From positions 1-31,944 of the forward strand of contig NIVC01001926.1 in assembly GCA_002269645.1 (NCBI GenBank): a DNA stretch of 31,944 nucleotides, given 5' to 3'. This stretch comes from Macrostomum lignano. Lineage: Eukaryota. Under the pieces are notes generated by a model. That model had not been told where the DNA came from and ran no database searches. It worked only from the letters and a program-made list of their open reading frames with translations. Made by a program: the position numbers and the translations under genes. This document shows positions 9,835 to 31,944 of this stretch, one piece after another (position 1 is the stretch's first letter; each line of letters starts with the position of its first letter).

Positions 9835-10348
<514 letters not shown>

Positions 10349-10989
10349 TTCTTTCGTTCTCGCTCTCTCTCGCTGTCTCTCTCTTTGTCATCCTGTAAGA
10401 CTGTTTATCTGTTTTTGCCAAGTATCTACCGGTACAGTCGTCGATGCAATTTTTAGAAAGAATTAGACGTTATGAAGAACGCTACCTTGTCAAGTTTTTA
10501 TTTTTGAGCTGTGATGCGCAAAATTCAACAGAAATATAATTAGTGTACATAGCTCAGTATGCAACTTCAAACATATTCAATACAGACGCAGTTAAGTTGA
10601 ACAGAGATTTATCAATCAGAAAATTGTTGGCCTGCCATGCAACGCAGCGCTGCTTTTTGATGCAGACACCCTCCAACAGACAATAACTGGGTTGCTAGCT
10701 TGTGCTTAAATCAAAGCAGACCCTGACTTCTTGCGCTGCTGGTCGAAGTAGGAGTTCATGCGAACGTATAGGGTAAAGGAAAAGCAAAAAGTTATTGAGA
10801 TGACAGTCTGAGCGAGCCAGAAACGCTACCTACTGAGCATTTTAGCTGTCACAATTTGCTTTGGACACTAGGGATGGCATGGTTGGCTTTGAGACGTGTT
10901 GGTTGCTAGTAAGGTGAGGTGATTAATGAGGCTTGAGAAGCGCTTGAGGGTTTGAGAAGGCAAGCCGAGTGAAGCAAAATCTTTTTGTG

Positions 10990-12202: not shown

Positions 12203-15200
12203 CTGTATTGACAGCGATTTAATGGTCTTTTGTAACTTTGCATGACTCATATAGATGTCTGAGTTCATAACAATTGGGTTACGTGGTGTAGTTAAAATCC
12301 CTGCACCCACAGGCTATTCCCTCATCCATGATAGGGCTATTAGATTAGCGATCCATTGCATTCATTCATCCATAGATTAGAAATCCATTCTATTCCGTCA
12401 GCCGCAATCTACATGTACATACGAGCTACTAGTAGCGTTCAACCCAGAGCAGTGGCTACTCACCCATGATGCCTCCTAGGTCGGAGAACAGATTCACCAG
12501 CTCGTAGCTGCGCTCCTCAAACAGCTGCCGCACGGTAAGGGTTTTCGGATAAACCCGCAGCTGCAGGAAGCTCTGCTTGATGATGTTATGCACCTGGACA
12601 CAGTGCTCGTCATCTTCGAACAGGTCTGACTTCCTGTCCAGCTCCGTGTCCAGACAGCGACTCAGGTTCACTCTGTGATGCGTGATAGAAAAGTTGAGCG
12701 CATGCTCGGTGCTGGCATAATTGTCCAGCTTCCTCTGCATCATCTTGTTGATTTCGTCAACTCGCGACTTGAGCATGCCGGCTATGCGGGCCAAGCGGAT
12801 TCGGGCGCCGCGAATTTGGAAATTGTGATCCGGCCAGCGGCTCTGGAACACCGAGAAGTCGTAGGTGGTGTAGTTGCAGATATTCAGGCAACTGGACTGC
12901 TTGCGGCCGGACTTCAAATAAGGCATGGCGCATTTCAGGCGATTCAGACGGCGTTGAATCTCCGGGAATCGGTCGGCCAGTAGCTGAGCGGCGTCGAATC
13001 TGTCTGGCAGGTGCAGCCGGTCGAAGATGTCGGTGCGCATCCTGCCGGTGCTGCGGTCCAGCAGGCTGTAGTTGGCGATGCTTGGGTCAGTTTCAAAGAA
13101 CTTGCGGATTCGCTGCAGCAGGCTGAGCAGGTCTGGCTTGTTCTGAGCGCCAAGGAGGTCGTGGCAGTATTCCAGCTGCGGCTGACCATCTGGCTCGGAC
13201 TTAACGAGGCCTTCGACCGTGCATTTACAGTTGTCCCGAATCAGCTTCAGGTACTCGAATGTGGTGCAGTCAGCTAGCTGGTTTTCGTAGCTGGTGACGC
13301 TTCTGAAATTGGGATTGGTGTATTGATTTTGAGCAGGCTTTTGAGCAATTTTTGCACCGACTATTGAGCAACATTGTGAGCTAGGACTACTCAAGTAGAA
13401 GGACGGGAAACTACAATACGTTTCTGAGAAAATTTTAGGAGGCTGGTTTTACCGAAGAAATACACTACGGAGATACAAGCGCAGGTTTTCATTTTTCAGC
13501 AAAAAATTGCTATTGTTTTTGATAGGAGGCAGATCCAATGTTCATCTTTTGATGTGTCTTGCCTCTCTTATATCTCTATTGATATTTATAAAGCTTTTCG
13601 TTTAGAAAACTAGGATTCTATGTTAATTTTATATCCTACGTGCAATCGTACATGTACTTTCTCTGAATATCATAGAAATGGCACAGCTCGACTCATTGGT
13701 TTTAGGAATCAATTTTTTCATTCTTAGCTTATTGACTGTGTAACAATAATCTTCTATCACTCACACACGCTCACACAGGGTGTACAGCGGTCCTGACTTT
13801 CTAATCGGCAGACATGTACACTCTCTGTGCCCTCATGGGCGTGAATCGCACGAAAACCTTCCGGCCAACTTCGCGCACGGAATCGAACCAGGGGTCGTTT
13901 TGGAAGAGTCAAATGCATTTACCGCTGAGCTGCTCTGCGCCTCCCCCCATTGGTAGCGATGAACTTGTTGGGGATTCGAGCACGGGCTTTTCGTGCAACT
14001 AACGTCCATTAGTTCCAAAAGCCTTAGCACAGAGGAGAGTGTACAACTGCCTGACGAAGAGAAAATCAAGGACCACTATTCACCCTGTGTGCGTGATCAG
14101 GGTCAGCAAAATGGGGTATAACTACTCGTCAGAACTGGGCATAAAGATCTTTCAAATTTGGCGCAACGCACGCCAATTCTAAACACTCTCTCGGCCCAAA
14201 AATTTCGCTACTCAGTATTTGAATTCGATTGCAATGCGGCCGCAGTCAGAGCCCAACCTGCTGAGTTAGTTGGCTAAGGTCCGCTGCACTTGCCCTCAAG
14301 GCCGCTCAAGAGGTTGTGGCTAAGAGTGTGGGGGAAAATATGGATTGCAAGTCGCTCCGCCGTCTGTTTGCACCCTCCAGTTGAGAGCGGCCAGCCCACT
14401 CCAAGTGTTATTTAAGTGTGTTATTCTGCTCAACGCACGAGCAGGCGCAGCTCATCCCACGAGCTGTGCCGTATTTGGGCAGCCCCAGTTCATTGCTGCG
14501 GACTTTCACGCCGATGAACAAGCCTCTCGTCTGACAACCTCGGCTGCCCCGGTTGATAGAGAAAGCCTGTTTCGAGTCTTCTTCTATAATACTGCATTTT
14601 TGTCTCAGCAAGAGGAGTCAGGGACTGTGAGATGCAGAGAACAGTTTGAGTCGAATATGAGTGAGAAAATCCTATCTAAGCCAATCAGATGGGAAGTGAA
14701 GCTACGTTGGTTTGGGGAGTGAAGTCACACCGAGTGAAGTCACATCGATTTGGAAGTAGGCGACATTCGACCTATCTGAAAGGTCACATATCAGTCCGGG
14801 GCTCACATATCAGTCGAGGGGGGCATTCACAATGCCACTTACCCCAGCAGGTGGTCGAAGGCGTGGAATCGGCCCTTCGGCTCGCACCGTTTCGTGGGCG
14901 TGTTGGCCAGGCTGGTCTGCACCTGGTTGAGTGCCAGCACCGTCTGCATGCCGCTGGGAGAGTTGATGCCGTACTCGCTTGGGTAGGGGATCGTGTCCTG
15001 CGGGTTGGCGCAGCTTCAGCTGAATGATGGAGCATGGGGTTCAGTCTGAATTGAAACAAATTGGGGATTGTTAAGCTAATCTAGCCAACAGATAGATAAA
15101 GAAAGATAATGGATTGCTAATCTATAGCCATCGCAGATGAAGGAATAGAATGGATTGCTAATCTATAGCTCCATCAGGGATGAAGGAATAGAATGAATTG

Positions 15201-18200
15201 CTAATCTATAGCTCCATCAGGGATGAAGGAATAGAATGGATTGCTAATCTATAACCATCAGGGATGAAGGAATAGAATGGATTGCTAATCTATAGCCATC
15301 ACGGATGAAGGAATAGAATGGATTGCTAATCTATAGCCATCACGGATGAAGGAATAGAATGGATTGCTAATCTATAGCCATCGCAGATGAAGGAATAGAA
15401 TGGATTGCTAATCTATAGCTCCATCAGGGATGAAGGAATAGAATGAATTGCTAATCTATAGCTCCATCAGGGATGAAGGAATAGAATGGATTGCTAATCT
15501 ATAGCCATCACGGATGAAGGAATAGAATGGATTGCTAATCTATAGCCATCACGGATGAAGGAATAGAATGGATTGCTAATCTATAGCCATCACGGATGAA
15601 GGAATAGAATGGATTGCTAATCTATAGCCATCACGGATGAAGGAATAGAATGGATTGCTAATCTATAGCCATCAGGGTTGAAGGAATAGAATGGATTGCC
15701 AATCTATAGCCATCAGGGTTGAAGGAATAGAATGGATTGCTAATCTATAGCCATCACGGATGAAGGAATAGAATGGATTGCTAATCTATAGCCATCACGG
15801 ATGAAGGAATAGAATGGATTGTTAATCTATAGCTCCATCAGGGATGAAGGAATAGAATGGATTGCTAATCTATAGCTCCATCAGGGATGAAGGAATAGAA
15901 TGGATTGCTAATCTATAGCTCCATCAGGGATGAAGGAATAGAATGGATTGCTAATCTATAGCCATCACGGATGAAGGAATAGAATGGATTGCTAATCTAT
16001 AGCCATCACGGATGAAGGAATAGAATGGATTGCTAATCTATAGCCATCAGGGTTGAAGGAATAGAATGGATTGCTAATCTATAGCCATCACAGATGAAGG
16101 AATAGAATGGATTGCTAATCTATAGCCATCACGGATGAAGGAATAGAATGGATTGCTAATCTATAGCCATCACGGATGAAGGAATAGAATGGATTGCTAA
16201 TCTATAGCCATCAGGGTTGAAGGAATAGAATGGATTGCTAATCTATAGCCATCACAGATGAAGGAATAGAATGGATTGCTAATCTATAGCCATCACGGAT
16301 GAAGGAATAGAATGGATTGCTAATCTATAGCCATCACGGATGAAGGAATAGAATGGATTGCTAATCTATAGCCATCACGGATGAAGGAATAGAATGGATT
16401 GCTAATCTATAGCCATCAGGGTTGAAGGAATAGAATGGATTGCTAATCTATAACCATCAGGGTTGAAGGAATAGAATGGATTGCTAATCTATAGCCATCA
16501 GGGTTGAAGGAATAGAATGGATTGCTAATCTATAGCCATCAGGGTTGAAGGAATAGAATGGATTGCTAATCTATAGCCATCACGGATGAAGGAATAGAAT
16601 GGATTGCTAATCTATAGCCATCACAGATGAAGGAATAGAATGGATTGCTAATCTATAACCATCAGGGATGAAGGAATAGAATGGATTGCTAATCTATAGT
16701 CATCAGGGATGAAGGAATAGAATGGATTGCTAATCTATAGCCATAAATGAATGCATTTTGGAAATATTTCAGTCTAAATTCTACGCTAGAAAGTGTTTAT
16801 GATTTTGAACGATTAAGCCACGATCGGTCAGCTCTAATATTTCAGCGGCACACTCTGCTTGTCACTCATTCGCTTCACTCCCTGCAGCTGCCGCAGCCTG
16901 TCAGTTTTTTGCAGTACGCGATTTTACAAAGTGATTTCTTGTGCAACAATTTATTCATTTTTGTAGTTCGGCCAACCTGCAGCTGCTTGACCCCCCGCCG
17001 TTCCGGAGGATGGGGTGGGGCTGTAGGTTTGCGCCGCAGCCTTTCACTTTGTCCGGTTTTGGGGTGGTCGGCTACGCCAGCCAGCTGGAATTCCCCAAGC
17101 ACTGCTGTGAGGGTGTCTTCAGTCCTGGGTGCCACCTCAGCATCAAATGTTCTCCCACCCCGTACCCCAGACAGGGTCTTGTTCCCCCCCCCCCAACATC
17201 CACCAACCACCCCAATCTGTGCTGGTGCGTCTCCCACTCTCTGTCTAATCTCTCTCTCCTGCCTCTACGAGCTAGTATGACATTTCGATGTGTTTACAGG
17301 AACACAATGCCATCAGAAAGTTTGGCCCTCCCGGACCGAGGGCACTTGTTTAGATGTTGCCTCTGCGCAGAGCGGAGCGGCATGCAGGCGGAGAGAGCTT
17401 CAAGGGCAGAGTCGGGAACAGAACTGGGAGATATTGACGGAAGCGGAGACCCGGTGTGGTTAGAGGGTGTGCGATTTTTTCCCTATCCGCCCGGTGCTGC
17501 AGTCGCAGGAAGTGGAAAACAGGTGGGGGCGGTGGTCTCTGCCGCTTCCGCGAATTACACCTGGCCCCTGCCAGGTCCTCGCGCCGCTGCTGCCAAACTC
17601 AAGGGCTGCCAGCACAGCCTACGGCCTGATACAGGGGATGCGGCCTGCAGCCACTCGCTGAGCTCACATTCTCCCTGCTTTCTGCTCATCCGGATGCTGC
17701 CTTGATGCCCTTCATCTGCGGGCTGCCCTTGCCACATCTTCCTTTCTCACCTAGCTGTGTCTATTTTTGCCGCCTCATGTCTGTCTTAGTGTCAGTCAGT
17801 CAGTCAGTCAGTCAGTCAGTCAGTCAGTCAGTCAGTCAGTCAGTCAGTCAGTCAGTCAGTCAGTCAGTCAGTCAGTCAGTCAGTCAGTCAGTCAGTCAGT
17901 CAGTCAGTCAGTCAGTCAGTCAGTCAGTCAGTCAGTCAGTCAGTCAGTCAGTCAGTCAGTCAGTTAGTCAGTCAGTCAGTCAGTCAGTCAGTCAGTCAGT
18001 CAGTCAGTCAGTCAGTCAGTCAGTCAGTCAGTCAGTTAGTCAGTCAGTCAGTCAGTCAGTCAGTTAGTCAGTCAGTCAGTCAGTCAGTCAGTCAGTCAGT
18101 CAGTCAGTCAGTCAGTCAGTCAGTCAGTCAGTTAGTCAGTCAGTCAGTCAGTCAGTCAGTCAGTCAGTCAGTCAGTCAGTCAGTCAGTTAGTCAGTCAGT

Positions 18201-21200
18201 CAGTCAGTCAGTCAGTCAGTCAGTCAGTTAGTCAGTCAGTCAGTCAGTCAGTCAGTCAGTCAGTCAGTCAGTCAGTCAGTCAGTCAGTCAGTCAGTCAGT
18301 CAGTCAGTCAGTCAGTCATTCAGTCAGTCAGTCAGTCAGTCAGTCAGTCAGTCAGTCAGTCAGTCAGTCAGTCAGTCAGTCAGTCAGTCAGTCAGTCAGT
18401 CAGTCAGTCAGTCAGTCAGTCAGTCAGTCAGTCAGTCAGTCAGTCAGTCATTCAGTCAGTCAGTCAGTCAGTCAGTCAGTCAGTCAGTCAGTCAGTCAGT
18501 CAGTCAGTCAGTCAGTCAGTCAGTTAGTCACTTTAGCTGGGTTGAGGGCTTGAAAGCTTTCCTGCAACAGTGTCTGTCAGGATATCAAATTACTCAGGCA
18601 CTTCTAGGCACCAGACAAACATAATTCATTAGTAGTTTAAAGTATTTTGTATCCGTGATGCCCCTGCAGTCTCTCTGTTCTCCTTTTCTCACCCCAGCTC
18701 CCTCTCAGAACAGTTGGCCCAACCAAACGGACAAGAGAAGCCAGAAGCCGAGAAGACAGAGACGCGGCAGAGAAAAAGTGAGGGAGCTGAGGAGGAGCTG
18801 CAGAGGGACAGCCCCGCGGGCGGCCCCCTTGGGATCGGCTTCTGGTCCCCTTCGGCATCGCAACCAGATGCCGCCTGCGAAGCACGATTAGGACCGGCAT
18901 GGCCGCATGATTAATCCTGAGCTGGGCTGAGGGCAGAAGGCCAGTTAAACAGAGCCAGTCGAGTTTCTTTTAGTTGAGGAGACCGGGGACGGCTCCGCGG
19001 GCTGCACTGTTGAATTGGCTGTAAATCAAGCTGGATCTCGGCTACTGCAGGCAGGGTCTCATGTGCTCGGTCGCGCCCCGCTGCATGGGTTGCCATCATG
19101 CTTGACCTGTTCGCTTTTTTACATCGGTCGCTTAAAGTCCTTCGGTTGTTCTCGGGTTCAAAATATTAAGTGTGCTTTTCTACTTATTGCTACCCCGGAT
19201 TCGTACGGTCCTGAGGGGTGACGAGTCGCTCCGAGCGGGTAACGCATCTGGCTCACTCCAAAGTTCTCGGGATCGGTTTCGTGCGCAGTCGCTATTGACC
19301 TGCGACTTGGAGGGTCAACCGCCCAGGTGTACATTACTGACGATGAGAATAGTCGGGTTCGCTGTGCGGAATATGCTGGCTGCGGATCGACTGTCTTTGG
19401 AAGTTGCGGCAGCCCTCTCTACAGCAAAGTCACAATCGATGTTTGCGGGCAGTAAAAGAGTCGCTAATGATTGATGGCCAAGCGATGACTCACTGTGTTG
19501 ACTCGTGAAATGATGCAGCAACCATGGACCGAGCATAGCTATTGAAGCACTTGATTTTTGTGACCTTAACTGATCCCAGAGTGAAAAATTTGGTGTTAGA
19601 AAATGTTCCAACACAGCAATGCAAAACACAGGGACCGTACAAAGCTACAGGAGTCGGAGCACTTCCCTATTGATGTTGACACAGCAATATACTAGTACTT
19701 AACTGTGCCTCGGAGCAAGAAGGCAGATCTATTCGAACCTGAGCAGAGTAAAGCTTATCCCGCGACCTGCTTTTTTGAAAGAAGCTGCAGTCTGTGTGTT
19801 ACAACCACAAGAAGAGACTAGACAATGGTGCGAAAACACAGTAGGAATCATCTGAGGTGCAGACAAAATATGCAACAAAAAGTGATTAACCACTAAACAC
19901 AACCTATAACACAGTATGTTCGTTGTCACTTGTCCCTACATTCCCCAACTGTCTATGGCCACTTGTACCTACATTCACCAACTGTCTATGGCCACTTGTA
20001 CCTACATTCACCAACTGTCTATGGCCACTTGTACCTACATTCACCAACTGTCTATGGCCACTTGTACCTAAATTCACCAACTGTCTATGGCCATCAAAGG
20101 TCTTATCAAGGATGATTTGAGTAAACAAAACGTATAAAAGCCAAATTGTTCCTACTTCTATGAAACTGTCCAAACACTGCCCAGCCTCTCTTGCATCGGC
20201 CTCTCGAACTCCAAAAATGCCGACAAAAGTCTCGCCTCCGTGCCGAGAAATAATAAATGAAGACCGAGGGACGAGCGCTCGGACCTCAACCTGACACCAT
20301 GGGCTGGTCGCTCCATAGTAGAGAGTAGATCGCTGGGGAAGACACATTTAAGGGATTGATTTTTTTTGTGCCGAAACCCCAGCTGTTTTTCCTCTCTTTC
20401 TCTCCCCCCCTCTCTCTCTCTCTCTCCATTTCCTTCATGCTGCTTTCACTGCCCCCCTTCCCAATCTTCTTCTGGCCGCCGATTTCAAGTTAGTTTCTGT
20501 TGCTTTAGCAATATTCTGATCCTGCTTCTGGCTCGGCTGAGTTCCGTACCCCCAATCCTCACATTGAGGGCTCAGCAGATAGCTTATAGTGTTGCAGAGA
20601 TTGGTTGCTGGCCTTAAATCCGTTCTACTTACTTTAATCTATTTTTGCTTATCGTCCAGCGGAATTCTCTAGAATTTTCCTTCAACCAAACACAACGATT
20701 TCAGTAAAGAGATTTGCTGCACTTGCTGAAATTGCTTACCTGTTTGGGGAAGCTGGTTCAGACTGAACTGTCTTGGGCACATGTAGGCCCATTTATATAC
20801 TTCACTCTACTCTACTCTACTCTTCTCTACTCTACTCTACTCTACTCTACTCTACTCTACTCTACTCTACTCTACTCTACTCTACTCTACTCTACTCTAC
20901 TCTACTCTGCTCTACTCTACTCTACTCTTCTCTACTCTACTCTACTCTACTCTACTCTACTCTACTCTACTCTACTCTACTCTACTCTACTCTACTCTAC
21001 TCTACTCTACTCTACTCTACTCTACTCTACTCTACTCTACTCTACTCTACTCTACTCTACTCTACTCTACTCTACTCTACTCTACTCTACTCTACTCTAC
21101 TCTACTCTACTCTACTCTACTCTACTCTACTCTACTCTACTCTACTCTACTCTACTCTACTCTACTCTACTCTACTCTACTCTACTCTACTCTACTCTAC

Positions 21201-24200
21201 TCTACTCTATTTTACGAGCTACTTAACTCTACTCGGCTCTACTCTGCTCTACTCTACTTCACCTATTTTAGTCTACTCTACTGCGCTTGTACTTCAGTCT
21301 TATCCACTCTTCTTCACTCAACATTATTTCTTGAAATATTTCTACTCTACCAAGCTCTACCCAGCAATAAAACCAAGGTGCAACTAGAACTATGGGTTTT
21401 AGTTTTCTCTGATATTACCTATAATTCTACTGGAGTCTAATGTATTGTATTATACTTTGCAATTTCATATTCTTATCTCCATTATATTCTACTCAATACA
21501 GTCTACACAGTGCCTATTACTAGGGTAATCAGCATTGGGTTTCCAGTCCGTCGCGATGAATTGGTGTATAACTCTGACCGACCGAATTATTTGCCTTAAC
21601 TTCCCCTGATTTATGGAAGTGCAAGCGCCAGTCGTCTCGGCTTCGCTCACATACGTTCTGACCGTCTGCCCCACCTATCAGTATCTGCACTGGTGGCTAT
21701 GCCGCCTGCAATGCAAGCCCTTGGCAACGGACCTGCTTCCAATGTTTTCTTCGCAAATGTTAATCTAACTACACGTTCCTTGGTACACGAATGCTATCCC
21801 AAAACAGATAGTTGATTGCGTTGCGGCGGCCTGCGCAAAGCGGGACCGGACCTGCATGCCATTAATCTTTTGGCTGGGCCAAAGGAAGGTGCCGTGCGAT
21901 TTCTGCAACAATTTTGCTGCTTTAGCTGAACTTGGAAATCTCCAATACTTTCGATGCCGCTTACTCGCTTGACCGCTTGACCGCAGACAAAAGTTATAGT
22001 AAGGCATTCAGTTACCGGTTTTCGTCTGTCTATGGCCTCTTGTCCCATCCACCAACTGTCTATGGCCCCTTGTCCCATGCACCAACTGTCTATGGCTACT
22101 TGTCTCATGTACCAACTGTCTATGGCCACTTGTCCTATCTACTGTCCATGGTCTCTGGCCACTTGTCCCATCTACCAACTGTCTATGGCTACTTGTCTCA
22201 TGTACCGACTGTCTATGGCCACTTGTCCTATCTACTGTCCATGGTCTATGGCTACTTGTCCCATCCACCAACTGTCTATGGCCACTTGTCCCATCCATCA
22301 ACTGTCTATGGCTACTTGTCCCATCCACCAACTGTCTATGGCCACTTGTCCCATCCATCAACTGTCTATGGCTACTTGTCCCATCCACCAACTGTCTATG
22401 GCCACTTGTCCCATCCATCAACTGTCTATGGCTACTTGTCCCATCCACCAACTGTCTATGGCCACTTGTCCCATCCATCAACCAACCAACCAAGACTAGG
22501 GGAATTTCTGCCCTAAAACTTTACGATCTAGAGTCGCAATGGACTGACAGCACGAGCTAAAATGACTGAATTAAAATCTCGTAATTCCCACTCTATTATA
22601 AGCCTAGGATTTTAGAATTCCAAATTAATTAACTCATTTATGCCCTCCGCTTCCACAGCCAGCTTTTCTCCGGCAAAATCGAGAAACAGACAGCGGCGTT
22701 AAAAAGTCTTTAGGAAGCCAATCGGAACAATTAAAGTTGTTGGAAAACGGCTAACGGATTAGGCTGCGGATTTGAGTGACTGCTCACTACTCACGCAAAC
22801 TGGTTAGCAAGATGATCAACCAGGACCGCTAGATCAGAAGGATTGAACGGTTACGGGAGAAGAATGAGATTAAAGAGCAGGAGAGAAATACGTCCCAAGA
22901 CAATCGGCGACTTTATCCGATTATGAATCTTATGAGTCTATTCTATGTTCAAACCGGTTGCGGCACAAACACTATTTTATGTCTGTTTCTGGAAAAGATT
23001 TATACCCCCCTAGTAATTATACAGTACTTTACTTACCAAACTGGACTATTAAATAGGATTGTACTTTTAATCTAACAATAAAATAATCTCGCTGATGCAT
23101 TTTGCAGCGTGAAATTGCACGACTGACGAGTGCAGGGGCCTTCTGCCTCAGCTGTGCATGGTATATGAGTATGAAAATGTGAAAACATAGCTGCTCGTAC
23201 CTGACAGCTTGTACACAGGCTTTTCAATGGCATTTCAGTTTAGATTTGGAAAGTTTATTGTTTAGAATAAACAATAGCCAATAAGATTTTAAAAAACTAT
23301 GAACAATAGGGGGTTGTAGCCTAGTGGTAAGAGCGTCGAACTCACGACTGAAAGGTCGGGGGTTCGAATCTCAACCCAGTCAGAACAATTTTTGTCCTTG
23401 AGCAAGACACTAAACTCTGCATTGCTTCAGTTAACCCAGCAGTAAAATGGGTGCCAGATGGGGTACATGGAATTGACAGTGTGTGGCGACCCCCCAGTCC
23501 TTGGACTGAACAGCCGTACGCAGCTTTCAGATGCACCGCGCAATAGCTGCGGCTGAGCTGTCGGTTGCACGTCTGGCCCAATTTGGTCAGGTGTACTCAG
23601 TTATTATTATTGTTCAGAAAACTGGGCATGAGGAAGAAAGGGGTTCGATCAGCCTTAAAAAAACTACATTTTGTTCTTGTTTGAAAGTTTCGCGTTAATC
23701 TACGAGCGTACATAAAAATTCATTGAGTCATAATAAAAGTCAAATTAGGCATTGGGGCGTGACAGTGAGGCCAGCATTCTGGCCTCCAATCCGGACATTG
23801 GGAAGCGCCGGCGTCGGCAAGCCGAGGCCGCAGCAATCATGCTGGGAGCTGCTGCTCGTGCCGGCACTGTTTGATCCGCTTGTTGCGGCCAAATGCCGAC
23901 AATTTAGTCGGCATGCGATTCTCAGTAAACGCTGTGTTATAAAATTTGCCGCGAAACACGACAGGCTTCGATTTTGTGACGATAATTTGCTAAGTTTGTG
24001 TTTCTCCCTCTTGCTCGCTTCCTAAGCGAGTAAATGAAATCGCTAATTTCAAGTTGAAACGTTTTTACGACTGGGAGTTCGGTTCAAAGCTCGGGCATCG
24101 ATTAGGTTGCCAGGGAGAGAGTGAGCTAGGACTGCCCCCCCCCAGCTGCATTGGGGTCAGTAGTGTCCGCTGTTCCATCGTGTTCCCCGTCAGATTATCC

Positions 24201-26450
24201 ACTTTAACAACACCAATTAATGACCGAACTCTATATATGCAGCTTTAGTCAGGAAGGTTTTGTAATTAAGAGCACTTGTATGAGCAATTGAACACGGCTG
24301 CTTCTACAACTGTTTATTGGATCAAAGATTTTAGGAGTTAGAACACCTTTTTGAGAAACCAACTGTTGTCATAGGGACGCATTGGTCATAGCATCTCTCT
24401 CAGTACGCTCATTATTCAAAGCTTTGAAATCCTTACGTACGGCTACTAAAAATGATTTGATGAGACAATGTGCTTAACCTCTTCCACACTGATGCCTTTG
24501 GGTCTCACTAGGGTAGCTCTGTCTAGGGTAGTCCGGTCTTGAAAAGCTAGTCTGGACTTGGATTTGGTATGCAGAAACACAAAGTTAGACCAGTCTACTA
24601 TAGCAGAACTAGGGTAGCTAGACCATAGACTATAGACTGAACTACCCAAGTCCGGACTAGCTAGTCTGGACTAGGCTTTCTGCATACGGCCCATGGTTTT
24701 ATTATAGGCAATGATTAACTTCAGTCACTCTTTTCTTCACCACTCCTGAAAAATTAACCATTTTCTGCCTCTAAAACCATAGACACAATCTACCATTGTC
24801 TGCCTCCAAAACCATAGACACAATCTACCATTGTATACCTCCAAAAACATAGACACAATCTACCATTGTCTGCCTCCAAAGCCATAGACACAATCTACCA
24901 TTGTCTGCCTCCAAAACCATAGACACAATCTACCATTGTCTACCTCCAAAACCATAGACACAATCTACCATTGTCTGACTCCAAAGCCATAGACACAATC
25001 TACCATTGTCTACCTCCAAAACCATAGACACAATCTACCATTGTCTACCTCCAAAACCATAGACACAATCTACCATTTCTTTCTCCAAAACCATCGACAC
25101 AAGCTGTCATTGTCCCTTATCAAGCCCCTTTAGGGCCCTCAAACCAAACTATCACCCATCTACACCCCAGATGTACTTTTGTCATCATGGGTTTTCCAAA
25201 AGTTAGCAAGTAGGAGTGTACACAGGAATAGTCAAAGGCAAAGTCAAAGGCAAATGTCCGATGAATACGAGCGTACGCAATTGTCATTTTTCATTGTGCG
25301 CTTGCACTGCACAATGCCAGCATCCTTGCACGCGCTGAGGTCAAACGACAATCTGATACCAGACAACTGCGGGTGCCGTACAAAGTTTTGACCACAAGTG
25401 AACTGAGTTCAGTGCTCGGACGGGATCCCGTCCAAAAGCTGATGTCGGGAACGAAACGTTTTGAAAGATTACGTTTCTGCGGCTACAAGCTATTATTGTT
25501 GTCCTCGAAGGCAGGAAGGAAGAAGGAATCAAAGAGACAGGGCTGGAAAGTCTGGGTCAGGAAATTAAGGAACTCACCTGTTGGTGCACGGCCACCCTGA
25601 GCCCGCCGGTCTCCAGTCCCGTCGTCACGGTGTCGCTGTAATAGTCGATGCTCTGCTTGACGTCGACGCTGGGACTGTACAATACCAGGACGAGGCCTTT
25701 CTCCACTCCGCTGGACCGAATAAACCTGTTAGTAGCCTTGAACGAGAAGCAGTTGCCATAGTCCCGGTGGTAGAACACTGTGAAATTTTTACCTGTGCAT
25801 CGCTCCTGATTGTACTGGCAGTACAGCAGCATGTCGAATATCCTTGCGCTGGCGGCTGTCATGTTGAACTTTGGCCAGGTGTGCACCGCGTGCTCAAAGG
25901 TTGCGTAGGCCAGTTTGATGGCTTTGACGCGGCTGCTGGCCTCGTCGTCTCGTTCTTCATCCGACACCAGGTAGCCCAGCATGTAGTTGGCCACAAAGTA
26001 ATTGTTTCTGTTCACGTCGCTGCGCAGCTGTCTGGAGCCTATGGTAAAGAATTTCTTCATCAGCGGATCGCAGAATGTCACATCCGGGAAGGTGAACCGG
26101 TTGGTGAGCAGCCTGGTCGTGCTGGACACCGGATAGGCTCGAAACAGGCTGATCTGCTTGTAGGTGTGCAGCGTGAGGCCAGTCATGGCTCCGAACACCA
26201 CCAGAGCCCACAGCCCCCGCAGCCAGGGCACCTGCTGCGAGAAGAATCTGCCAAGCCCGTGCGCGGACGTCCTGTGCGCAAAGCTCTGCAAATTGGCGCA
26301 CAGCATCCGCCTGCGATAGTTGTGCCGGCTTTTCGACTTACTACCTAGCTGCCGCCGCTGCTCAACAGGGTCGCCTCCGAGATCGGTGCGCCAGTCGGAA
26401 TCGTCCGCCTCCTCCAGCGCCCTCTCCAGCATATCGCTTTTCGGGTCCAT
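11766..26450 (-). CDS. DEG/ENaC amiloride-sensitive cation channel subunit, FaNaC-like, 767 aa (exons 26450-25578, 14997-14843, 13302-12464, 12202-11766)
   Basis: Motifs: TSAHG pre-TM1, TM1, FPDVTFC, YGNCFSF, GGLRVAVHQQ|DTIPYP..YGI, CKC, WP, FLQLRVY, LFSDLGGIMG|LWIGVSMVTLCE (GxS filter). All three introns are GT-AG and phase-matched (0, 2, 1). Exons sum to 873+155+839+437 = 2304 nt = 767 aa plus stop. An in-frame TAA lies about 36 nt upstream of the ATG. Confidence 0.93.
12464..13302 (-). CDS. DEG/ENaC exon 3 (thumb, knuckle, pre-TM2)
   Basis: Acceptor AATTTCAG ends at 13303; donor G|GTGAGT at 12463; in frame with ORF 12456..13394. Confidence 0.92.
13755..13945 (-). mobile_element. tRNA-derived SINE-like element in channel intron 2
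   Basis: Minus strand has an A-box-like CAGCTCAGCGG (13932-13922), B box GGTTCGATTCC (13889-13879), a non-tRNA body and a GTGTGA-type tail. The anticodon arm does not pair. Confidence 0.6.
14843..14997 (-). CDS. DEG/ENaC exon 2 (missed by the ORF track): DTIPYPSEYGINSPSGMQTVLALNQVQTSLANTPTKRCEPKGRFHAFDHLLG
   Basis: Acceptor CCCGCAG ends at 14998; donor GG|GTAAGT at 14842. It supplies the expected post-VH P..P...GI...G..T.L segment. Confidence 0.9.
15109..16744. repeat. 41/43-bp minisatellite (GCCATCACGGATGAAGGAATAGAATGGATTGCTAATCTATA), about 39 copies
   Basis: Period 41 (e.g. 15301 to 15342). Head-to-tail with no spacers. Confidence 0.98.
17791..18530. repeat. (GTCA)n microsatellite, about 740 bp
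   Basis: Directly visible, with scattered GTTA/TTCA variants. Confidence 0.98.
19926..20093. repeat. 33-bp minisatellite (CCACTTGTACCTACATTCACCAACTGTCTATGG), about 5 copies
   Basis: Period 33 (19948 to 19981). Confidence 0.92.
20804..21280. repeat. (CTCTA)n pentanucleotide microsatellite
   Basis: Near-perfect to about 21209, degenerate afterwards. Confidence 0.97.
22025..22490. repeat. 30-bp minisatellite (CCACTTGTCCCATCCACCAACTGTCTATGG), about 15 copies
   Basis: Period 30. Homologous to the 33-bp array, differing by a 3-bp indel. Confidence 0.95.
23309..23612 (+). mobile_element. tRNA-derived SINE with a CORE-like central domain and (TTA)n tail
   Basis: A box TAGCCTAGTGG and B box GGTTCGAATC. 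These are followed by GTCCTTGAGCAAGACACTAAACTC...GTAAAATGGG, resembling the CORE-SINE TGACCTTGGGCAAGTCACTTAACCTC...TGTAAAATGGG. Ends TTATTATTATT. Confidence 0.8.
24775..25100. repeat. 35-bp minisatellite (AAAACCATAGACACAATCTACCATTGTCTACCTCC), about 9 copies
   Basis: Period 35 (24781 to 24816). Confidence 0.95.
25578..26450 (-). CDS. DEG/ENaC exon 1 (N-terminus, TM1, finger, palm)
   Basis: ORF 25557..26450; donor CAG|GTGAGT at 25577. Confidence 0.93.
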
Positions 26451-27069
26451 TGTCCGCTGTGCCTCTCTCCTTCCTGATCTCTCGCTCCTTTAACTAGCTT
26501 GATATTCAAGCTATCCAAACACAGCGTATCTCCCGTGCTGACCCGATCAACTCCTGTTACTATGCAGGTTTGTTAAAATATGCGACCAGTTACCTGTAAG
26601 CGCAGGCTATACTCGCAACTTTCTCTGTCTCTCTCAGCCAGGCCTGAGCCCGCAGTGCTCGCCGTCAGCCAGGCTAAATCGATGGCCAACCCTTGGCCAG
26701 CGAAGTCCCGATCCGCGATCCCCTCCTCTTTCCCAGCTAGGCAAGGATTGGCTGCCTCGCTGCCTGCACCGGTCTCGGTAGCGGTCTCGGGCGCGCGCTT
26801 CTCATTGTTCTGAAGTGCATCAGTTTAGATGGAATTTATTGGGCGCGTTCGAGCTGCTGAGACTGGCTTGGGCTTGAGTTTAGAAAGGTCAATCTAGCGT
26901 CCGTTAGTGAAACAATGAGAAGCAGGGTCGAAACGTAGCAGAAGAATTGATGAGTTAGTATTAAAGACTACAAAGTTTTACATTATACGCTCGTAGTTCA
27001 CAGACGTTGTTAACTAGTTGCTTACATTTTTAGTATTGCTTAGGTGTGCTGTATATGTTGTACTCGTAT

Positions 27070-27817
27070 CTGCTGTCTATGAAACTCGTGCTGTCTATGA
27101 AACTCGTGCTGTCTATGAAACACTTTCTGTCAATTGAAATCGTGCTGTCTATGGAACTCGTGCTGTCTATGGAACTCGTGCTGTCTATGGAACTCGTGCT
27201 GTCAATGGAACTCGTGCTGTCTATGGAACTCGTGCAGTCTATGGAACTCTGCTGTCTATGAAACTCGTGCTGTCTATGGAACTCGTGCTGTCAATGGAAC
27301 TCGTGCTGTCTATGGAACTCGTGCAGTCTATGGAACTCTGCTGTCTATGAAACTCGTGCTGTCTATGAAACACTTTCTGTCAATTGAAATCGTGCTGTCT
27401 ATGGAACTCGTGCTGTCTATGGAACTCGTGCTGTCAATGGAACTCGCGCTGTCTATGGACCTCGTGCAGTCTATGGAACTCGTGCTGTCTATGGAACTCT
27501 GCTGTCTATGAAACTCGTGCAGTCTATGGAACTCGCGCTGTCTATGGAACTCGTGCTGTCTATGGAACTCGTGCTGTCAATGGAACTCGTGCTGTCTATG
27601 AAACTCGTGCTGTCTATGGAACTCGTGCTGTCAATGGAACTCGTGCTGTCTATGGAACTCGTGCTGTCAATGGAACTCGTGCTGTCTATGGAACTCGCGC
27701 TGTCTATGGAACTCGCGCTGTCTATGGAACTCGCGCTCTCTCGCGCTCTCTAGAACTTGCGCTGTCTATGGAACTCGCGCTCTCTCGCGCTCTCTAGAAC
27801 TCGCGCTCTCTATAGAA
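27070..27817. repeat. 18-bp minisatellite (GCTGTCTATGGAACTCGT) containing a 250-bp higher-order duplication
   Basis: Period 18. The variant block CACTTTCTGTCAATTGAAAT recurs at 27121 and 27371. Confidence 0.95.
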
Positions 27818-29985: not shown

Positions 29986-30549
29986 CCCTTCACTTTTAAT
30001 TCTGGTATTCCCATCTTATTTATAATCTGTTTCTCGTAGTAGTTCGCTCTTAATTCCTTCTATTCCTTCTAAATCCGTATTATTTGAACAAAGCGCAGTA
30101 AAAGAATGATATGTGTCAGAGTCTACATGTAATTATCACCTACCAGCGCTAATAATTACACTAAAAGTAGGGAAGATAACACTTGGCATCCACAGGGCTA
30201 CATAATGGGGCATGCTGCATCCTTCACCTGCGGCACTGTCCCATCGGATAACATGTTATTACATCTAGGCTATTTAAACAAGACACAAGCACCCCTTAGA
30301 ATGCATCGAATTAACTTCACACCCTTGAACTTTGCTTAAATGCGATATAGGCTTCTGTTAATAATTTATCGAGACAACACGGGAGCCGATTTTGTCCACC
30401 GCACTGAAATCAATTGGCACTTTTCTACCATCAGGAAAATTTAATCTCCGCCTTCGTACTTTGTATTATTCGGAGTCTTTATATTGATACTGCATACGTT
30501 CGTACATGTACATTCAAGACTATATGACAGGCTCCAATTATCCTTACAG

Positions 30550-30925
30550 CCACCTCACACTCCGCGTCCCGCGTGTACAGTTTTGGATGTACATTGCTGA
30601 AAATTACCTGTGGGGTAAAGGACTCATTCCAACCCTCACGAAACCCACCTCACGCCCCATGTGTACAGTATTGGATGTACATTGCTGAAAATTATCAGTG
30701 GGGTAAGGGACGCATTCAAACCCTCCGACACCCACCTCACGCCCCATGTGTACAGTATTGGATGTACATTGCTGAAAATTATCAGTGGGGTAAGGGACTC
30801 ATTCTCAACCTCCCGACACCCACCTCACGCCCGCGCATGCAGTATTGAATGTACATTGCTGAAAATTTCCTGTGGGGTAAGGGACTCATTCCGACCCTCA
30901 CGAAACCCACCTCACGCCTGCGTGT
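30550..30925. repeat. 87-88 bp tandem repeat, about 4 copies
   Basis: GTACAG(T/A)TTGGATGTACATTGCTGAAAATT at 30575, 30663 and 30750, with a variant at about 30838. Confidence 0.92.
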
Positions 30926-31088
30926 ATATTGGGTGCAAGGACTTCCTTCCTTCAAAGACTTTTAGACTAGGAATTTACCAGCAAGGTGAAATAGATGGGT
31001 TTTCTTCCCGGTTTAGGCCCTTGCGGATTACCTTAATCTTGAGCCTCTTCAGTGGGAAGTTCTCTCAACTCTCAGTAGCGTAGGTAGT

Positions 31089-31944
31089 GCTGCCACCAGT
31101 TCCTTCAGGTCTCGGCCTTCGGTGAGGTGAGCTTCCCGTCGGAACGAAATAACGAAGTCAACGAACACAGCACCTAGTGCAGATTTGCAGATTAATGAAC
31201 AAGGCGTCCTGATCAGCAGATCCCCGCCGGGCTCAGGGGTGACTGGGAAGGCAGTGTTAGCCTCCCTTAGGCTTGGGCTTTAGTGGGTCTCAGTCAGACC
31301 AGTACAAACGGATTCAGTACGCAAAGGGCACTTAGTTAGACACTGACGCACACGGGATCTTAGTGAATTCTCCGCAGATAAGAAGCCAATTCAATTCCTT
31401 GACGGAAACAAGGGGAGAGGGGTCCTATTTATAGCCGGAAACACCCACGCACAAGACTCGTGACTTGTTCTATTTTTAGAACTGACGTCACTTGAGATCT
31501 CGAGGCAGGGTCTCAGTGCGCGCAAGACCTCGTGACTCGTTCTATTTTTAGAACTGACGTCACTTGAGGTCTCCGGCCAGGGTACACGCGGCTGTGACTC
31601 AGTTGCTATTTTTAGCAACATGAGTCACTCCTCTCTTAGAGAAGGGAGGGGTCCGAAAGCACGTGATTCTCCCGGTAAACAGGGCCAACGAGTGCAGTAA
31701 ACATGTTTACTGCACTTTAGGACTCGAAAGAACGCAGAGTCTGTCATGTGACTTGCTCACATGACAGAGGAAAACGGGACGGGAACGAAACAGAGACAGA
31801 CCACAGCAGAGAAGCTGAGGGCTGAGAACAGAGACGCAGAAGGGCAGAACAGGCCAAGGGGAGCAACAGACGGGCCAAGGGGGGTGGGAAGCTGACCAGC
31901 GGCAGACAGCAACCCAGGGCGAGGGCGAGGGAGACTGCTGACAA
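31089..31944 (-). mobile_element. Putative retrotransposon 5' LTR with primer-binding site; internal region truncated
   Basis: Minus strand reads: U3-like motif cluster with a 72-bp direct repeat, TATAAAT (31433-31427), about 330 nt of R/U5-like sequence, then TGGTGGCAGC (31098-31089), which matches a tRNA-Leu-type 3' end (GCTGCCACCA). No gag/pol, second LTR or canonical polyA signal seen. Confidence 0.5.
31425..31768 (-). promoter_or_regulatory. TATA promoter with clustered MEF2, CRE, AP-1, E-box and forkhead motifs
   Basis: MEF2 YTA(A/T)4TAR at 31425-34, 31470-79, 31542-51, 31606-15. CRE TGACGTCA at 31483-90 and 31555-62. AP-1 at 31595-601 and 31621-27. CACGTG at 31660-65. GTAAACA at 31675-81 and twice within palindrome 31691-716. 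Confidence 0.7.

What the first reader, a model, noticed from the sequence alone, without database searches (positions are those of the whole stretch)
31425..31627. Activity-response-like enhancer: four MEF2 sites, two CREs, two AP-1 sites and a MEF2/TATA composite in 200 bp
Seen: a 72-bp-period direct repeat, each copy carrying the palindrome GTTCTATTTTTAGAAC (MEF2 core) 3 nt from a perfect CRE. A third module is a near-palindrome AP-1/MEF2/AP-1 (GTGACTCA-GTTGCTATTTTTAGCAAC-ATGAGTCAC). The TATA box itself lies within a MEF2 consensus (CTATTTATAG). Established: MEF2 plus CREB/AP-1 combinations define Ca2+- and stress-inducible enhancers such as the Arc SARE. Inference: a signal-inducible, probably TE-borne, promoter on the same strand as and about 5 kb upstream of a neuronal-type ion channel. 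It could make the element, or the channel, activity- or injury-responsive.
Basis: partly seen in the sequence, partly recalled or inferred. Interest (0 to 1): 0.72.

Follow-up and report, generated by a model that had tools for sequence, protein, structure and literature searches.

The report
Palindrome-rich TATA promoter upstream of ASIC-like gene
The motif cluster is real and far denser than chance, and it looks like a compact gene promoter on the minus strand built from three bZIP–MEF2–bZIP palindromes; no tool could show that it is transposon-borne, activity-inducible or the channel's own promoter.

Summary
There are four MEF2-consensus sites (31425, 31470, 31542, 31606), the window's only two perfect CREs (31483, 31555), two inverted AP-1 heptamers (31595, 31621) and a 72-bp tandem duplication. 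Local dinucleotide shuffles never reproduce this density, even after one duplicated unit is removed.

The three modules share one architecture: bZIP site, then a 12-bp MEF2 site, then a bZIP site 12–13.5 bp from the MEF2 centre. They sit −60 to −230 from a perfect TATAAATA on the minus strand. Three more palindromes lie further upstream, including the two longest perfect ones in the window.

Downstream of the TATA, the minus strand has no ATG for 508 nt (5.7 expected, P≈3e-4). That fits an mRNA leader. The stretch ends 18 nt after the best local splice donor.

My best reading is a Pol II promoter with a non-coding first exon. It probably serves the ASIC-like DEG/ENaC gene, whose start codon lies 4.95 kb downstream on the same strand.

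- **SARE-like:** fails on the SRF site.
- **TE-borne:** no support in the window.
- **Inducibility and channel linkage:** untested.

I rate this a new member of a known kind, of moderate interest.

The parts
31425..31434 (-). TATA box. CTATAAATAG on the minus strand contains TATAAATA, which fits TATAWAWR. The same 10-mer also fits the MEF2 consensus CTAWWWWTAG.
   Evidence: Orientation is inferred from the sequence: the plus-strand reading TATTTATA does not fit TATAWAWR, and all activator-type sites lie on the high-coordinate side.
31400..31402 (-). Predicted transcription start. The TCA has its A at 31400, 33 nt downstream of the first T of the TATA. This is inferred, not shown.
   Evidence: It is only a partial match to the Inr consensus.
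31460..31491 (.). Module M1: GTGACTT-GTTCTATTTTTAGAAC-TGACGTCAC. It comprises a bZIP half-site-like left arm, a MEF2 site and a perfect CRE at 31483-31490.
   Evidence: (D18).
31532..31563 (.). Module M2, the 72-bp tandem duplicate of M1. The MEF2 core is at 31542-31551 and the CRE at 31555-31562.
   Evidence: In one search the motif core has 2 mismatches in 41 nt between the copies, against 5 in 16 nt of the 3' spacer (Fisher P=0.015).
31594..31628 (.). Module M3, a 35-bp near-perfect palindrome: GTGACTCA-GTTGCTATTTTTAGCAAC-A-TGAGTCAC. It comprises AP-1, MEF2 and AP-1 sites.
   Evidence: (I3).
31630..31649 (.). Imperfect palindrome CCTCTCTT-AGAG-AAGGGAGG.
   Evidence: predicted hairpin.
31660..31665 (.). 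CACGTG E-box.
   Evidence: I8.
31691..31716 (.). Perfect 26-bp palindrome AGTGCAGTAAACA|TGTTTACTGCACT. It holds inverted forkhead-like GTAAACA cores around an RRRCATGYYY centre.
   Evidence: (I1). It has the longest perfect arms (13 nt) in the window.
31740..31768 (.). Hairpin-type palindrome TCTGTCATGTGA-CTTGC-TCACATGACAGA. It holds two inverted CATGTG E-box or M-box-like sites.
   Evidence: (I2). Its 12-nt arms are the second-longest perfect arms in the window.
30893..31399 (-). ATG-free leader, a candidate non-coding first exon. The best donor, GAG|GTGGGT, has its G at 30910. The first ATG is at 30892.
   Evidence: a 732-nt ATG-free gap, the longest non-satellite gap on the minus strand; 0 ATG against 5.7 expected, P=3e-4; donor scores.
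26451..26804 (-). Second ATG-free stretch, directly upstream of the channel start codon. It is 5'UTR-like and contains a candidate acceptor, tgcatAG|TAACAGG, at 26561/26560.
   Evidence: 0 ATG against 4.8 expected, P=1.3e-3.
25578..26450 (-). First coding exon of an ASIC-like DEG/ENaC channel gene. The ATG has the context gacaATGg, and the donor is CAG|GTGAGT at 25577.
   Evidence: Pfam ASC PF00858, E=1.3e-27, profile positions 1-236; best solved relative is ASIC1, E=9e-17..

Best explanation
This is a compact TATA-box RNA polymerase II promoter that fires on the minus strand from about 31400.

**Proposed mechanism (inferred).** Three copies of one composite unit lie 60-230 bp upstream of the TATAAATA. 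Each unit has a central 12-bp MEF2 site (T/G-CTATTTTTAG-A/C) flanked by bZIP sites 12-13.5 bp from its centre. Those bZIP sites are CRE (TGACGTCA) in two copies and AP-1 (TGAGTCA/TGACTCA) in the third. Further upstream lie an E-box, a forkhead-like palindrome and an inverted E-box pair. MEF2 dimers and CREB/ATF or Jun/Fos dimers would bind side by side on each unit and recruit co-activators to the nearby TATA. The TATA itself fits the MEF2 consensus, so MEF2 and TBP could compete or cooperate there.

**Origin.** Two of the units arose by a 72-bp tandem duplication.

**Likely target (inferred).** The transcript begins with an ATG-free leader of about 490-510 nt. The most likely reading is that this is a non-coding first exon, spliced over a roughly 4.3-kb minisatellite-filled intron to the first coding exon of the ASIC-like channel gene. 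The element would then be that gene's distal promoter.

**Shown:** the motifs, their non-randomness, their geometry, the strand asymmetry and the ATG depletion.

**Inferred:** factor binding, transcription, splicing to the channel, and any inducibility.
For: - **Motif density:** 8 sites against 0.22 expected in local shuffles, and 6 against 0.21 after the duplication is collapsed (0 of 2000 shuffles in each case). The CREs are unique in the window.
- **Constant architecture:** M1/M2 and the diverged M3 share one layout with 12-13.5 bp centre-to-centre spacing.
- **Constraint after duplication:** the motif core has 2 mismatches in 41 nt between the two copies, against 5 in 16 nt of the spacer (P=0.015).
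- **Core promoter:** TATAAATA fits TATAWAWR only on the minus strand, and every activator-type site lies upstream of it in that orientation.
- **Leader:** the minus strand has no ATG over 508 nt (P=3e-4). The stretch ends 18 nt after the strongest local donor.
- **Link to the channel:** the 354 nt directly upstream of the channel ATG are also ATG-free (P=1.3e-3). A spliced 5'UTR would therefore carry no upstream ATG. The channel gene is on the same strand, and its other intron is about 12 kb and also full of minisatellites.
- **Site identity:** CTATTTTTAG is a proven Mef2 site in insects and is bound by a flatworm Mef2 (PMC3250504). Mef2c and Creb1 interact physically on a Mef2–CRE–E-box cluster (PMC8945367).
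Against: - There are no transcript, chromatin or conservation data. The source organism is not in the protein collection, and no related locus was found.
- No strong GTRAGT donor exists in the leader. The best scores 4.9 bits and sits in a repeated unit, while the gene's own first donor scores 8.5.
- The ATG-free, CpG-richer stretch next to the channel ATG could equally be the 5'UTR of a separate proximal promoter.
- The Inr match is only partial.
- Perfect palindrome arms of 12-13 nt are longer than any dimeric factor needs. This hints at a structural or recent mutational origin for part of the array.
- Consensus matches do not prove occupancy.
Confidence: 0.5

Rival explanations
1. The segment is the LTR, or another promoter-bearing part, of a transposable element or endogenous virus. 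It would carry its own enhancer and promoter and may have been co-opted by the channel gene.
For: - Dense arrays of dimer sites next to a TATA, and tandem enhancer duplications of about 70 bp, are typical of retroviral and LTR U3 regions and of small DNA-virus enhancers (from my own knowledge).
- An ATG-free leader also fits an LTR R-U5 leader.
- TGGTGGCAGC on the minus strand (31098 to 31089) resembles the complement of a tRNA-Leu 3' end. I recalled that tRNA sequence from memory, so this is a lead and not a test.
- The window ends 320 bp upstream of the last module, so an upstream boundary or an internal region could lie outside it.
Against: - There is no second copy of any part of 30930-31944 in the 31 kb downstream.
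- There are no gag, pol, integrase or transposase ORFs or Pfam hits at 26.4-31.9 kb.
- There is no AATAAA or ATTAAA on the minus strand between 31400 and 30445.
- No 'CA' lies directly before the PBS-like string.
- The sequence upstream of the modules is pyrimidine-rich on the sense strand, which is the opposite of a polypurine tract.
- Exact-pattern scans of viral contigs and metagenomes found no copies. The one hit was a chance match inside a phage polymerase gene.
Confidence: 0.2
2. The element is a real promoter or enhancer, but not the channel's. It would drive an unannotated non-coding or short transcript in the 31.4-27 kb interval, or act as an enhancer for a gene beyond the window end.
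For: - The splice signals linking the leader to the channel exon are weak.
- The channel has its own ATG-free, CpG-richer upstream stretch, which could hold a proximal promoter.
- ATTAAA at 30445 could end an unspliced transcript of about 950 nt.
Against: - Depletion of ATG in the leader argues for a downstream translated ORF. No credible ORF or Pfam hit exists between 30890 and 26450.
- The 87-bp repeats downstream are not miRNA-like on the minus strand (z=-0.8).
- Rfam finds nothing.
Confidence: 0.15
3. The array is mainly structural rather than a set of factor sites. It would be a run of six hairpin- or cruciform-forming palindromes produced by the repeat-prone mutational regime of this genome, or serving a hairpin-dependent function such as an origin-like, recombination or mobile-element terminus. 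The transcription-factor motif matches would then be incidental.
For: - Single-strand DNA folding of 31440-31780 gives z=-7.15 with six consecutive hairpins.
- The two longest perfect palindromes of the window (13 and 12 nt arms) lie here, 24 bp apart.
- The M1/M2 and M3 copies differ symmetrically on both arms (T..A against G..C next to the MEF2 core), which preserves the dyad.
- The window holds 42 tandem-repeat rows, so it is highly repeat-prone.
Against: - The palindromes are not generic. Their cores are exact optimal sites for three families of dimeric factors, and chance does not give 3-4 perfect CTAWWWWTAG sites with flanking perfect CRE or AP-1 sites.
- They are positioned and oriented as expected relative to a strand-specific TATA and an ATG-free leader.
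- Dimeric factors themselves explain dyad symmetry.
- No Rep or nickase-type nonamer, terminal inverted repeats or adjacent element genes are visible.
Confidence: 0.12

Closest known systems
c-jun proximal promoter (ATF/AP-1-like jun1 site next to a MEF2 site)
   Same: An immediate-early-type promoter that combines a bZIP site with the identical MEF2 core CTATTTTTAG about 13 bp away, centre to centre, close to the start site. The spacing and the c-jun sequence are recalled from memory. That a MEF2 site exists in the c-JUN promoter and that MEF2 induces c-JUN is stated in PMC3413818.
   Different: c-jun has one MEF2 site and non-consensus bZIP sites, and its MEF2 site is not embedded in a long palindrome. 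Here the unit is triplicated, the bZIP sites are perfect consensus, and the TATA also fits MEF2.
Epstein-Barr virus BZLF1 promoter Zp
   Same: Four AT-rich ZI elements that bind MEF2D, plus a CRE-like ZII element that binds CREB/ATF/AP-1, all within -221 to +12 of a start site. It is a signal-triggered switch promoter (PMC2134958). The site numbers, site types and span are almost the same as here.
   Different: Zp is a viral promoter with auto-activator (ZIII) and ZEB1 silencer elements, and its ZI sites also bind Sp1/Sp3. I made no sequence comparison, and the viral-contig scans found no copy of this element. The resemblance is one of logic only.
Arc synaptic activity-responsive element (SARE)
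   Same: Clustered CREB and MEF2 sites within about 100 bp (PMC3561385).
   Different: SARE is defined by CREB, MEF2 and SRF sites together, and there is no CArG box here. SARE is a distal enhancer, whereas this cluster abuts a TATA box.
Tceal7 Mef2–CRE–E-box cluster (muscle promoter)
   Same: Mef2, CRE and E-box motifs are clustered in a promoter. Activation by Mef2c and Creb1 is synergistic, and the two proteins interact directly (PMC8945367). This window also has E-boxes at 31660 and at 31740-31768.
   Different: Tceal7 is mammalian, its sites are single and not palindromic composites, and it has no AP-1 pair.
Tandemly duplicated enhancers of retroviral LTRs and small DNA viruses, and palindrome-plus-bZIP-site repeat units of large insect DNA-virus 'hr' regions
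   Same: An enhancer duplication of about 70 bp immediately upstream of a TATA promoter, with palindromes flanked by CRE- or TRE-type sites. This comparison is from my own knowledge only.
   Different: No viral or TE genes, termini or additional copies were detected here.

Membership tests
Arc-type SARE | CRE (CREB site) | tested here: met
   TGACGTCA at 31483 and 31555.
Arc-type SARE | MEF2 site | tested here: met
   CTATTTTTAG three times and CTATTTATAG once.
Arc-type SARE | SRF site (CArG box CCW6GG) in the same roughly 100-bp unit | tested here: not met
   No match above position 28918, even with one mismatch. The definition is from PMC3561385.
Arc-type SARE | Induction by synaptic activity | not testable with these tools
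   This needs expression or reporter data.
LTR of an LTR retrotransposon or endogenous retrovirus | Second LTR copy in direct orientation | tested here: not met
   No long-range repeat of 30930-31944 within the window. Sequence beyond 31944 is unavailable.
LTR of an LTR retrotransposon or endogenous retrovirus | Adjacent gag, pol or integrase coding sequence | tested here: not met
   No such ORFs or Pfam hits at 26.4-31.9 kb.
LTR of an LTR retrotransposon or endogenous retrovirus | Poly(A) signal in R, within a few hundred nt of the start site | tested here: not met
   The first AATAAA or ATTAAA on the minus strand is at 30445, about 950 nt downstream.
LTR of an LTR retrotransposon or endogenous retrovirus | Primer-binding site complementary to a tRNA 3' end, directly after a terminal CA | tested here: inconclusive
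   TGGTGGCAGC (31098 to 31089, minus strand) resembles a tRNA-Leu 3' end as recalled from memory. It is not preceded by CA, and the window holds no tRNA gene to compare with.
LTR of an LTR retrotransposon or endogenous retrovirus | TG...CA termini, target-site duplication, many copies in the genome | not testable with these tools
   The upstream boundary is undefined or outside the window, and the source genome is not available.
TATA-box RNA polymerase II promoter | TATAWAWR about 30 nt upstream of the start site | tested here: met
   TATAAATA at 31433 to 31426 on the minus strand.
TATA-box RNA polymerase II promoter | Initiator at +1 | tested here: inconclusive
   TCA at 31402-31400, with its A 33 nt from the first T of the TATA. 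It is only a partial match to the Inr consensus.
TATA-box RNA polymerase II promoter | Transcribed leader lacking upstream ATGs | tested here: met
   0 ATG in 508 nt against 5.7 expected, P=3e-4.
TATA-box RNA polymerase II promoter | Mapped transcription start | not testable with these tools
   No transcript data are available.
MEF2 plus bZIP signal-responsive promoters (c-jun, EBV Zp type) | Several MEF2 sites and at least one CRE or AP-1 site within about 220 bp of the start site | tested here: met
   Compare PMC2134958.
MEF2 plus bZIP signal-responsive promoters (c-jun, EBV Zp type) | Inducibility through Ca2+, p38, ERK5 or PKA pathways | not testable with these tools
   This needs experiments.
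DEG/ENaC (ASC) channel, for the downstream gene | Match to Pfam PF00858 above the curated cut-off | tested here: met
   97.4 bits against a cut-off of 23.6 for 26450-25557, and 35.9 bits for 13394-12456. The best solved relative is ASIC1.

The most novel reading that the evidence does not exclude
The roughly 32-35-bp dyad (bZIP site, 12-bp MEF2 site, bZIP site at fixed 12-13.5 bp spacing) is a single symmetric enhanceosome unit. It would be selected as a whole for a bZIP-dimer, MEF2-dimer, bZIP-dimer complex. Two observations point that way. The diverged third copy changed both arms symmetrically, and it swapped CRE for AP-1 without altering the geometry. Triplicated next to a MEF2-type TATA, the unit would place an ASIC-like channel gene of a non-model animal under MEF2/CREB/AP-1 control. 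That would be a hard-wired link between activity- or stress-dependent transcription and a DEG/ENaC channel.
Probability: 0.15. Interest if true: 0.55.

Novelty: new member of a known kind. Interest (0 to 1): 0.3.

Why it matters
If the promoter is active and serves the channel, it would be an unusually clean natural example of a MEF2–bZIP composite promoter. It has three copies of one fixed-geometry unit with consensus-perfect sites, in front of a DEG/ENaC (ASIC-like) gene. That would make two questions directly testable with a 250-bp reporter. One is how MEF2 and CREB/AP-1 cooperate at defined spacing. The other is whether channel expression is tuned by activity, stress or muscle and neuronal differentiation outside vertebrates.

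If it proves to be TE-borne, it would be a case of a mobile signal-responsive promoter placed upstream of an ion-channel gene. As it stands it is a well-formed prediction, not a demonstrated function.

Tried and rejected
1. **Finding the organism or an orthologous locus.** A protein search with the channel's first exon found no relative at E<=1e-10. A protein-based metagenome scan found none. Conservation and gene-model tests were therefore impossible.
2. **Finding other copies of the element.**
   - A 21-mer scan of viral contigs gave one hit, which lies inside a phage DNA-polymerase ORF and is a chance match.
   - The 25-mer of M1 in metagenomes gave no hit.
   - The 26-bp palindrome and M3 in viral contigs gave no hit.
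   - The module strings in 8.3 million papers gave no hit.
3. **Structured RNA genes.** Rfam at gathering thresholds found nothing in the window. In E-value mode the only hit was a sub-threshold mir-17 match on the 26-bp palindrome (22.5 bits against 49.5, E=0.019). The hairpin is too short for a pre-miRNA, so I rejected it. There are no tRNAs. I rejected a Pol III type-3 promoter by eye because no T-run terminator follows for about 530 nt.
4. **miRNA cluster.** I tested whether the 87-bp x4 repeat downstream could be a miRNA cluster driven by this promoter. The minus-strand fold is no better than shuffles (z=-0.8), so I rejected this.
5. **CpG observed/expected as a promoter mark.** This was uninformative: 0.7-1.0 here against 0.73 for the whole window.
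6. **Direct repeat AGGGGTCC flanking the enhancer (31417-31424 and 31647-31654) as a target-site duplication.** An 8-mer repeat within 500 bp is expected by chance, so I did not pursue it.
7. **Technical failures.**
   - MAFFT misaligned M3 against M1 and M2, so I aligned the modules by eye.
   - A sliding-window fold z-score scan timed out, and I replaced it with direct palindrome counts.
   - The bacterial promoter and terminator scan is irrelevant to this sequence.
Full report

Yes.

- The MEF2 consensus YTAWWWWTAR occurs at 31425 (CTATTTATAG) and at 31470, 31542 and 31606 (CTATTTTTAG each). The whole 31.9-kb window has 8 matches against 1.5 expected.
- The only two perfect CREs of the window are at 31483 and 31555.
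- Two AP-1 heptamers in inverted orientation lie at 31595 and 31621.
- Tandem Repeats Finder reports a 72-bp unit in 1.9 copies at 31448-31583 (also family D18).

In 2000 dinucleotide-preserving shuffles of 31000-31944, the three motif types together average 0.22 matches against 8 observed. After deleting one 72-bp unit, so that the duplication is not counted twice, 6 are observed against 0.21 expected. No shuffle reached the observed number in either case.

There are three minor corrections:

- The 16-nt palindrome abuts the CRE directly.
- The donor-like AAG|GTAATC is at 31034-31026 on the minus strand, not near 31010.
- The AP-1 heptamer is not enriched window-wide.

**2. Anatomy of the cluster**

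The three modules are variants of one unit:

- **M1 (31460-31491) and M2 (31532-31563):** GTGACT(T/C)-GTTCTATTTTTAGAAC-TGACGTCAC.
- **M3 (31594-31628):** GTGACTCA-GTTGCTATTTTTAGCAAC-A-TGAGTCAC.

In all three, a 12-bp MEF2 site is flanked by bZIP-type sites whose centres lie 12-13.5 bp from the MEF2 centre. The bZIP site is a CRE in M1 and M2 and an AP-1 site on both sides in M3.

The base next to the MEF2 core differs between the copies symmetrically on both arms (T...A in M1/M2, G...C in M3). From memory, both versions fit the extended MEF2 consensus.

Between the two 72-bp copies, the 41-nt motif core has 2 mismatches and the 16 nt of 3' spacer have 5 (Fisher P=0.015). The numbers are small, but this is the pattern expected if the core has been constrained since the duplication.

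Further along, toward higher coordinates, lie:

- an imperfect palindrome (31630-31649);
- a CACGTG E-box (31660);
- a perfect 26-bp palindrome with inverted forkhead-like cores (31691-31716);
- a palindrome with 12-bp arms and a 5-nt loop, carrying two CATGTG E-boxes (31740-31768).

The last two are the longest perfect palindromes in the whole window. Only four palindromes with perfect arms of at least 9 nt exist in it, against 0.9 in shuffles. Folded as single-stranded DNA, 31440-31780 forms six consecutive hairpins with z=-7.15.

**3. Strand and core promoter**

The 10-mer at 31425-31434 reads CTATAAATAG on the minus strand. This contains TATAAATA, a perfect TATAWAWR. The plus-strand reading does not fit.

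All the sites above lie upstream of it in the minus orientation, at about -60 to -370. A TCA lies 33 nt downstream of the first T of the TATA (31402-31400) and is a partial initiator match.

The strongest independent sign that this strand is transcribed into an mRNA leader is ATG depletion. The minus strand has no ATG from 31620 down to 30890, a span of 732 nt. This is the longest ATG-free gap on that strand outside a minisatellite. For the 508 nt downstream of the predicted start, shuffles expect 5.7 ATGs and give zero in only 0.03% of trials.

**4. What does it drive?**

The next recognisable gene on the minus strand is a DEG/ENaC channel.

- The ORF at 26450-25557 matches Pfam ASC from profile position 1 (E=1.3e-27).
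- It is closest to ASIC1 among solved structures (E=9e-17).
- Its ATG has a good context (gacaATGg) and it ends in CAG|GTGAGT.
- A second large exon (about 13305-12463) and a TM2-like last piece (about 12200-11769) follow after an intron of about 12 kb full of minisatellites. The last piece has no Pfam hit of its own, and I identified it by eye.

The 354 nt directly upstream of the channel ATG are also ATG-free (P=1.3e-3). They contain an acceptor-like tgcatAG|TAACAGG at 26561/26560. It is no worse than the gene's real acceptors, which have weak pyrimidine tracts.

The best candidate is GAG|GTGGGT with its G at 30910 (4.9 bits), 18 nt before the first ATG at 30892.

One model fits all of this:

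- non-coding exon 1 at about 31400-30911;
- an intron of about 4.35 kb;
- exon 2 starting at about 26559.

This would give a 5'UTR of about 600 nt with no upstream ATG. It is an inference. A separate proximal promoter at 26.6-26.8 kb would explain the second ATG-free stretch equally well.

**5. Is it TE-borne?**

I found nothing in favour beyond general resemblance.

- No part of 30930-31944 recurs in the window.
- No TE-type ORF or Pfam hit lies between 26.4 and 31.9 kb.
- No poly(A) signal follows the start site for 950 nt.
- The sequence upstream of the modules is pyrimidine-rich on the sense strand, so it is not a polypurine tract.
- A PBS-like TGGTGGCAGC (31098 to 31089) is only a lead recalled from memory.
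- Exact-pattern scans of viral contigs and metagenomes found no copy.

The decisive test is the copy number in the source genome, and I could not run it. The organism's proteins are absent from the protein collection and no related locus was retrievable.

**6. Comparison with known systems**

- **Arc SARE:** defined by CREB, MEF2 and SRF sites together (PMC3561385). No CArG box occurs here even with one mismatch, so the element is not a SARE.
- **MEF2-plus-bZIP promoters:** the logic is closer to these.
  - In the c-jun proximal promoter, MEF2 induces c-JUN through a mapped site (PMC3413818). The identical CTATTTTTAG core and the roughly 13-bp spacing to the ATF/AP-1-like site are recalled from memory.
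  - The Epstein-Barr virus Zp promoter has four MEF2D-binding ZI elements and a CRE-like ZII element that binds CREB/ATF/AP-1, all within -221 to +12 (PMC2134958).
- **Muscle promoters:** the same motif set also describes these. CTATTTTTAG is the D-Mef2 site of Drosophila Actin57B and is bound by a schistosome Mef2 (PMC3250504). A Mef2–CRE–E-box cluster with direct Mef2c–Creb1 interaction drives Tceal7 (PMC8945367).

'Activity- or injury-responsive' is therefore one reading among several.

**7. Verdict**

- **Supported:** a promoter on the minus strand, on the same strand as an ASIC-like gene and 4.95 kb upstream of it.
- **Not met:** SARE-like.
- **Unsupported:** TE-borne.
- **Untestable here:** inducibility.

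The best explanation is a cellular TATA promoter with triplicated bZIP–MEF2–bZIP units and a non-coding first exon, probably the channel's distal promoter (confidence about 0.5). The rivals are a TE- or virus-derived promoter (0.2), a promoter for another transcript (0.15), and a mainly structural palindrome array (0.12).

This is a new member of a known kind, with interest of about 0.3.

Noticed in passing
window 9842-10352, 17791-18530, 20804-21282, 15108-16744, 27071-27741: The density of micro- and minisatellites is exceptional. Examples are (TCTG)x128, (GTCA)x185, (ACTCT)x96, a 41-bp unit x40 and an 18-bp unit x37. Tandem Repeats Finder reports 42 rows in 32 kb. Most lie in the introns and upstream region of the channel gene.
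   Followed up: no
window 30573-30918: An 87-bp unit occurs in 4 copies immediately downstream of the ATG-free leader. Each unit carries GAG|GTGGGT on the minus strand. The plus-strand RNA fold is slightly better than shuffles (z=-2.08), and the minus-strand fold is not (z=-0.81).
   Followed up: partly
window 31677-31729 (-): A sub-threshold Rfam match to mir-17 (22.5 bits against a gathering score of 49.5, E=0.019) falls on the 26-bp palindrome, whose minus strand reads UAAAGUGCAG. The hairpin is too short for a pre-miRNA, so I judged this a chance match.
   Followed up: partly
window 31417-31424 and 31647-31654: The direct repeat AGGGGTCC brackets the TATA-plus-three-module segment. An 8-mer repeat at this distance is expected by chance, so it is not evidence of a target-site duplication.
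   Followed up: no
window 3036-3521 (+): This ORF runs through 9- and 18-bp repeats and encodes (PGV)n, followed by (ARS/ARG)n and (QGR/QGH)n runs. It could be a collagen- or elastin-like low-complexity exon, or simply a translated minisatellite. It has no Pfam hit.
   Followed up: no
window 6917-7909 (-): A 330-aa ORF has a non-repetitive N-terminus followed by a highly acidic Glu/Tyr-rich repeat (EEAAEYGE and EYHEE units). It may be a real exon of an acidic repeat protein. It has no Pfam hit.
   Followed up: no
window 23336-23367: The palindrome TCGAACTCACGACTGAAAGGTCGGGGGTTCGA contains a GGTTCGA motif like a tRNA T-arm. It may be a relic of a tRNA-derived SINE. ARAGORN calls no tRNA there.
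   Followed up: no
window 26560-26810 (-): A GC- and CpG-richer stretch lies directly upstream of the channel ATG. It is ATG-free and contains a donor-like ACAG|GTAACT near 26593. It could hold a proximal, TATA-less promoter for the channel.
   Followed up: partly
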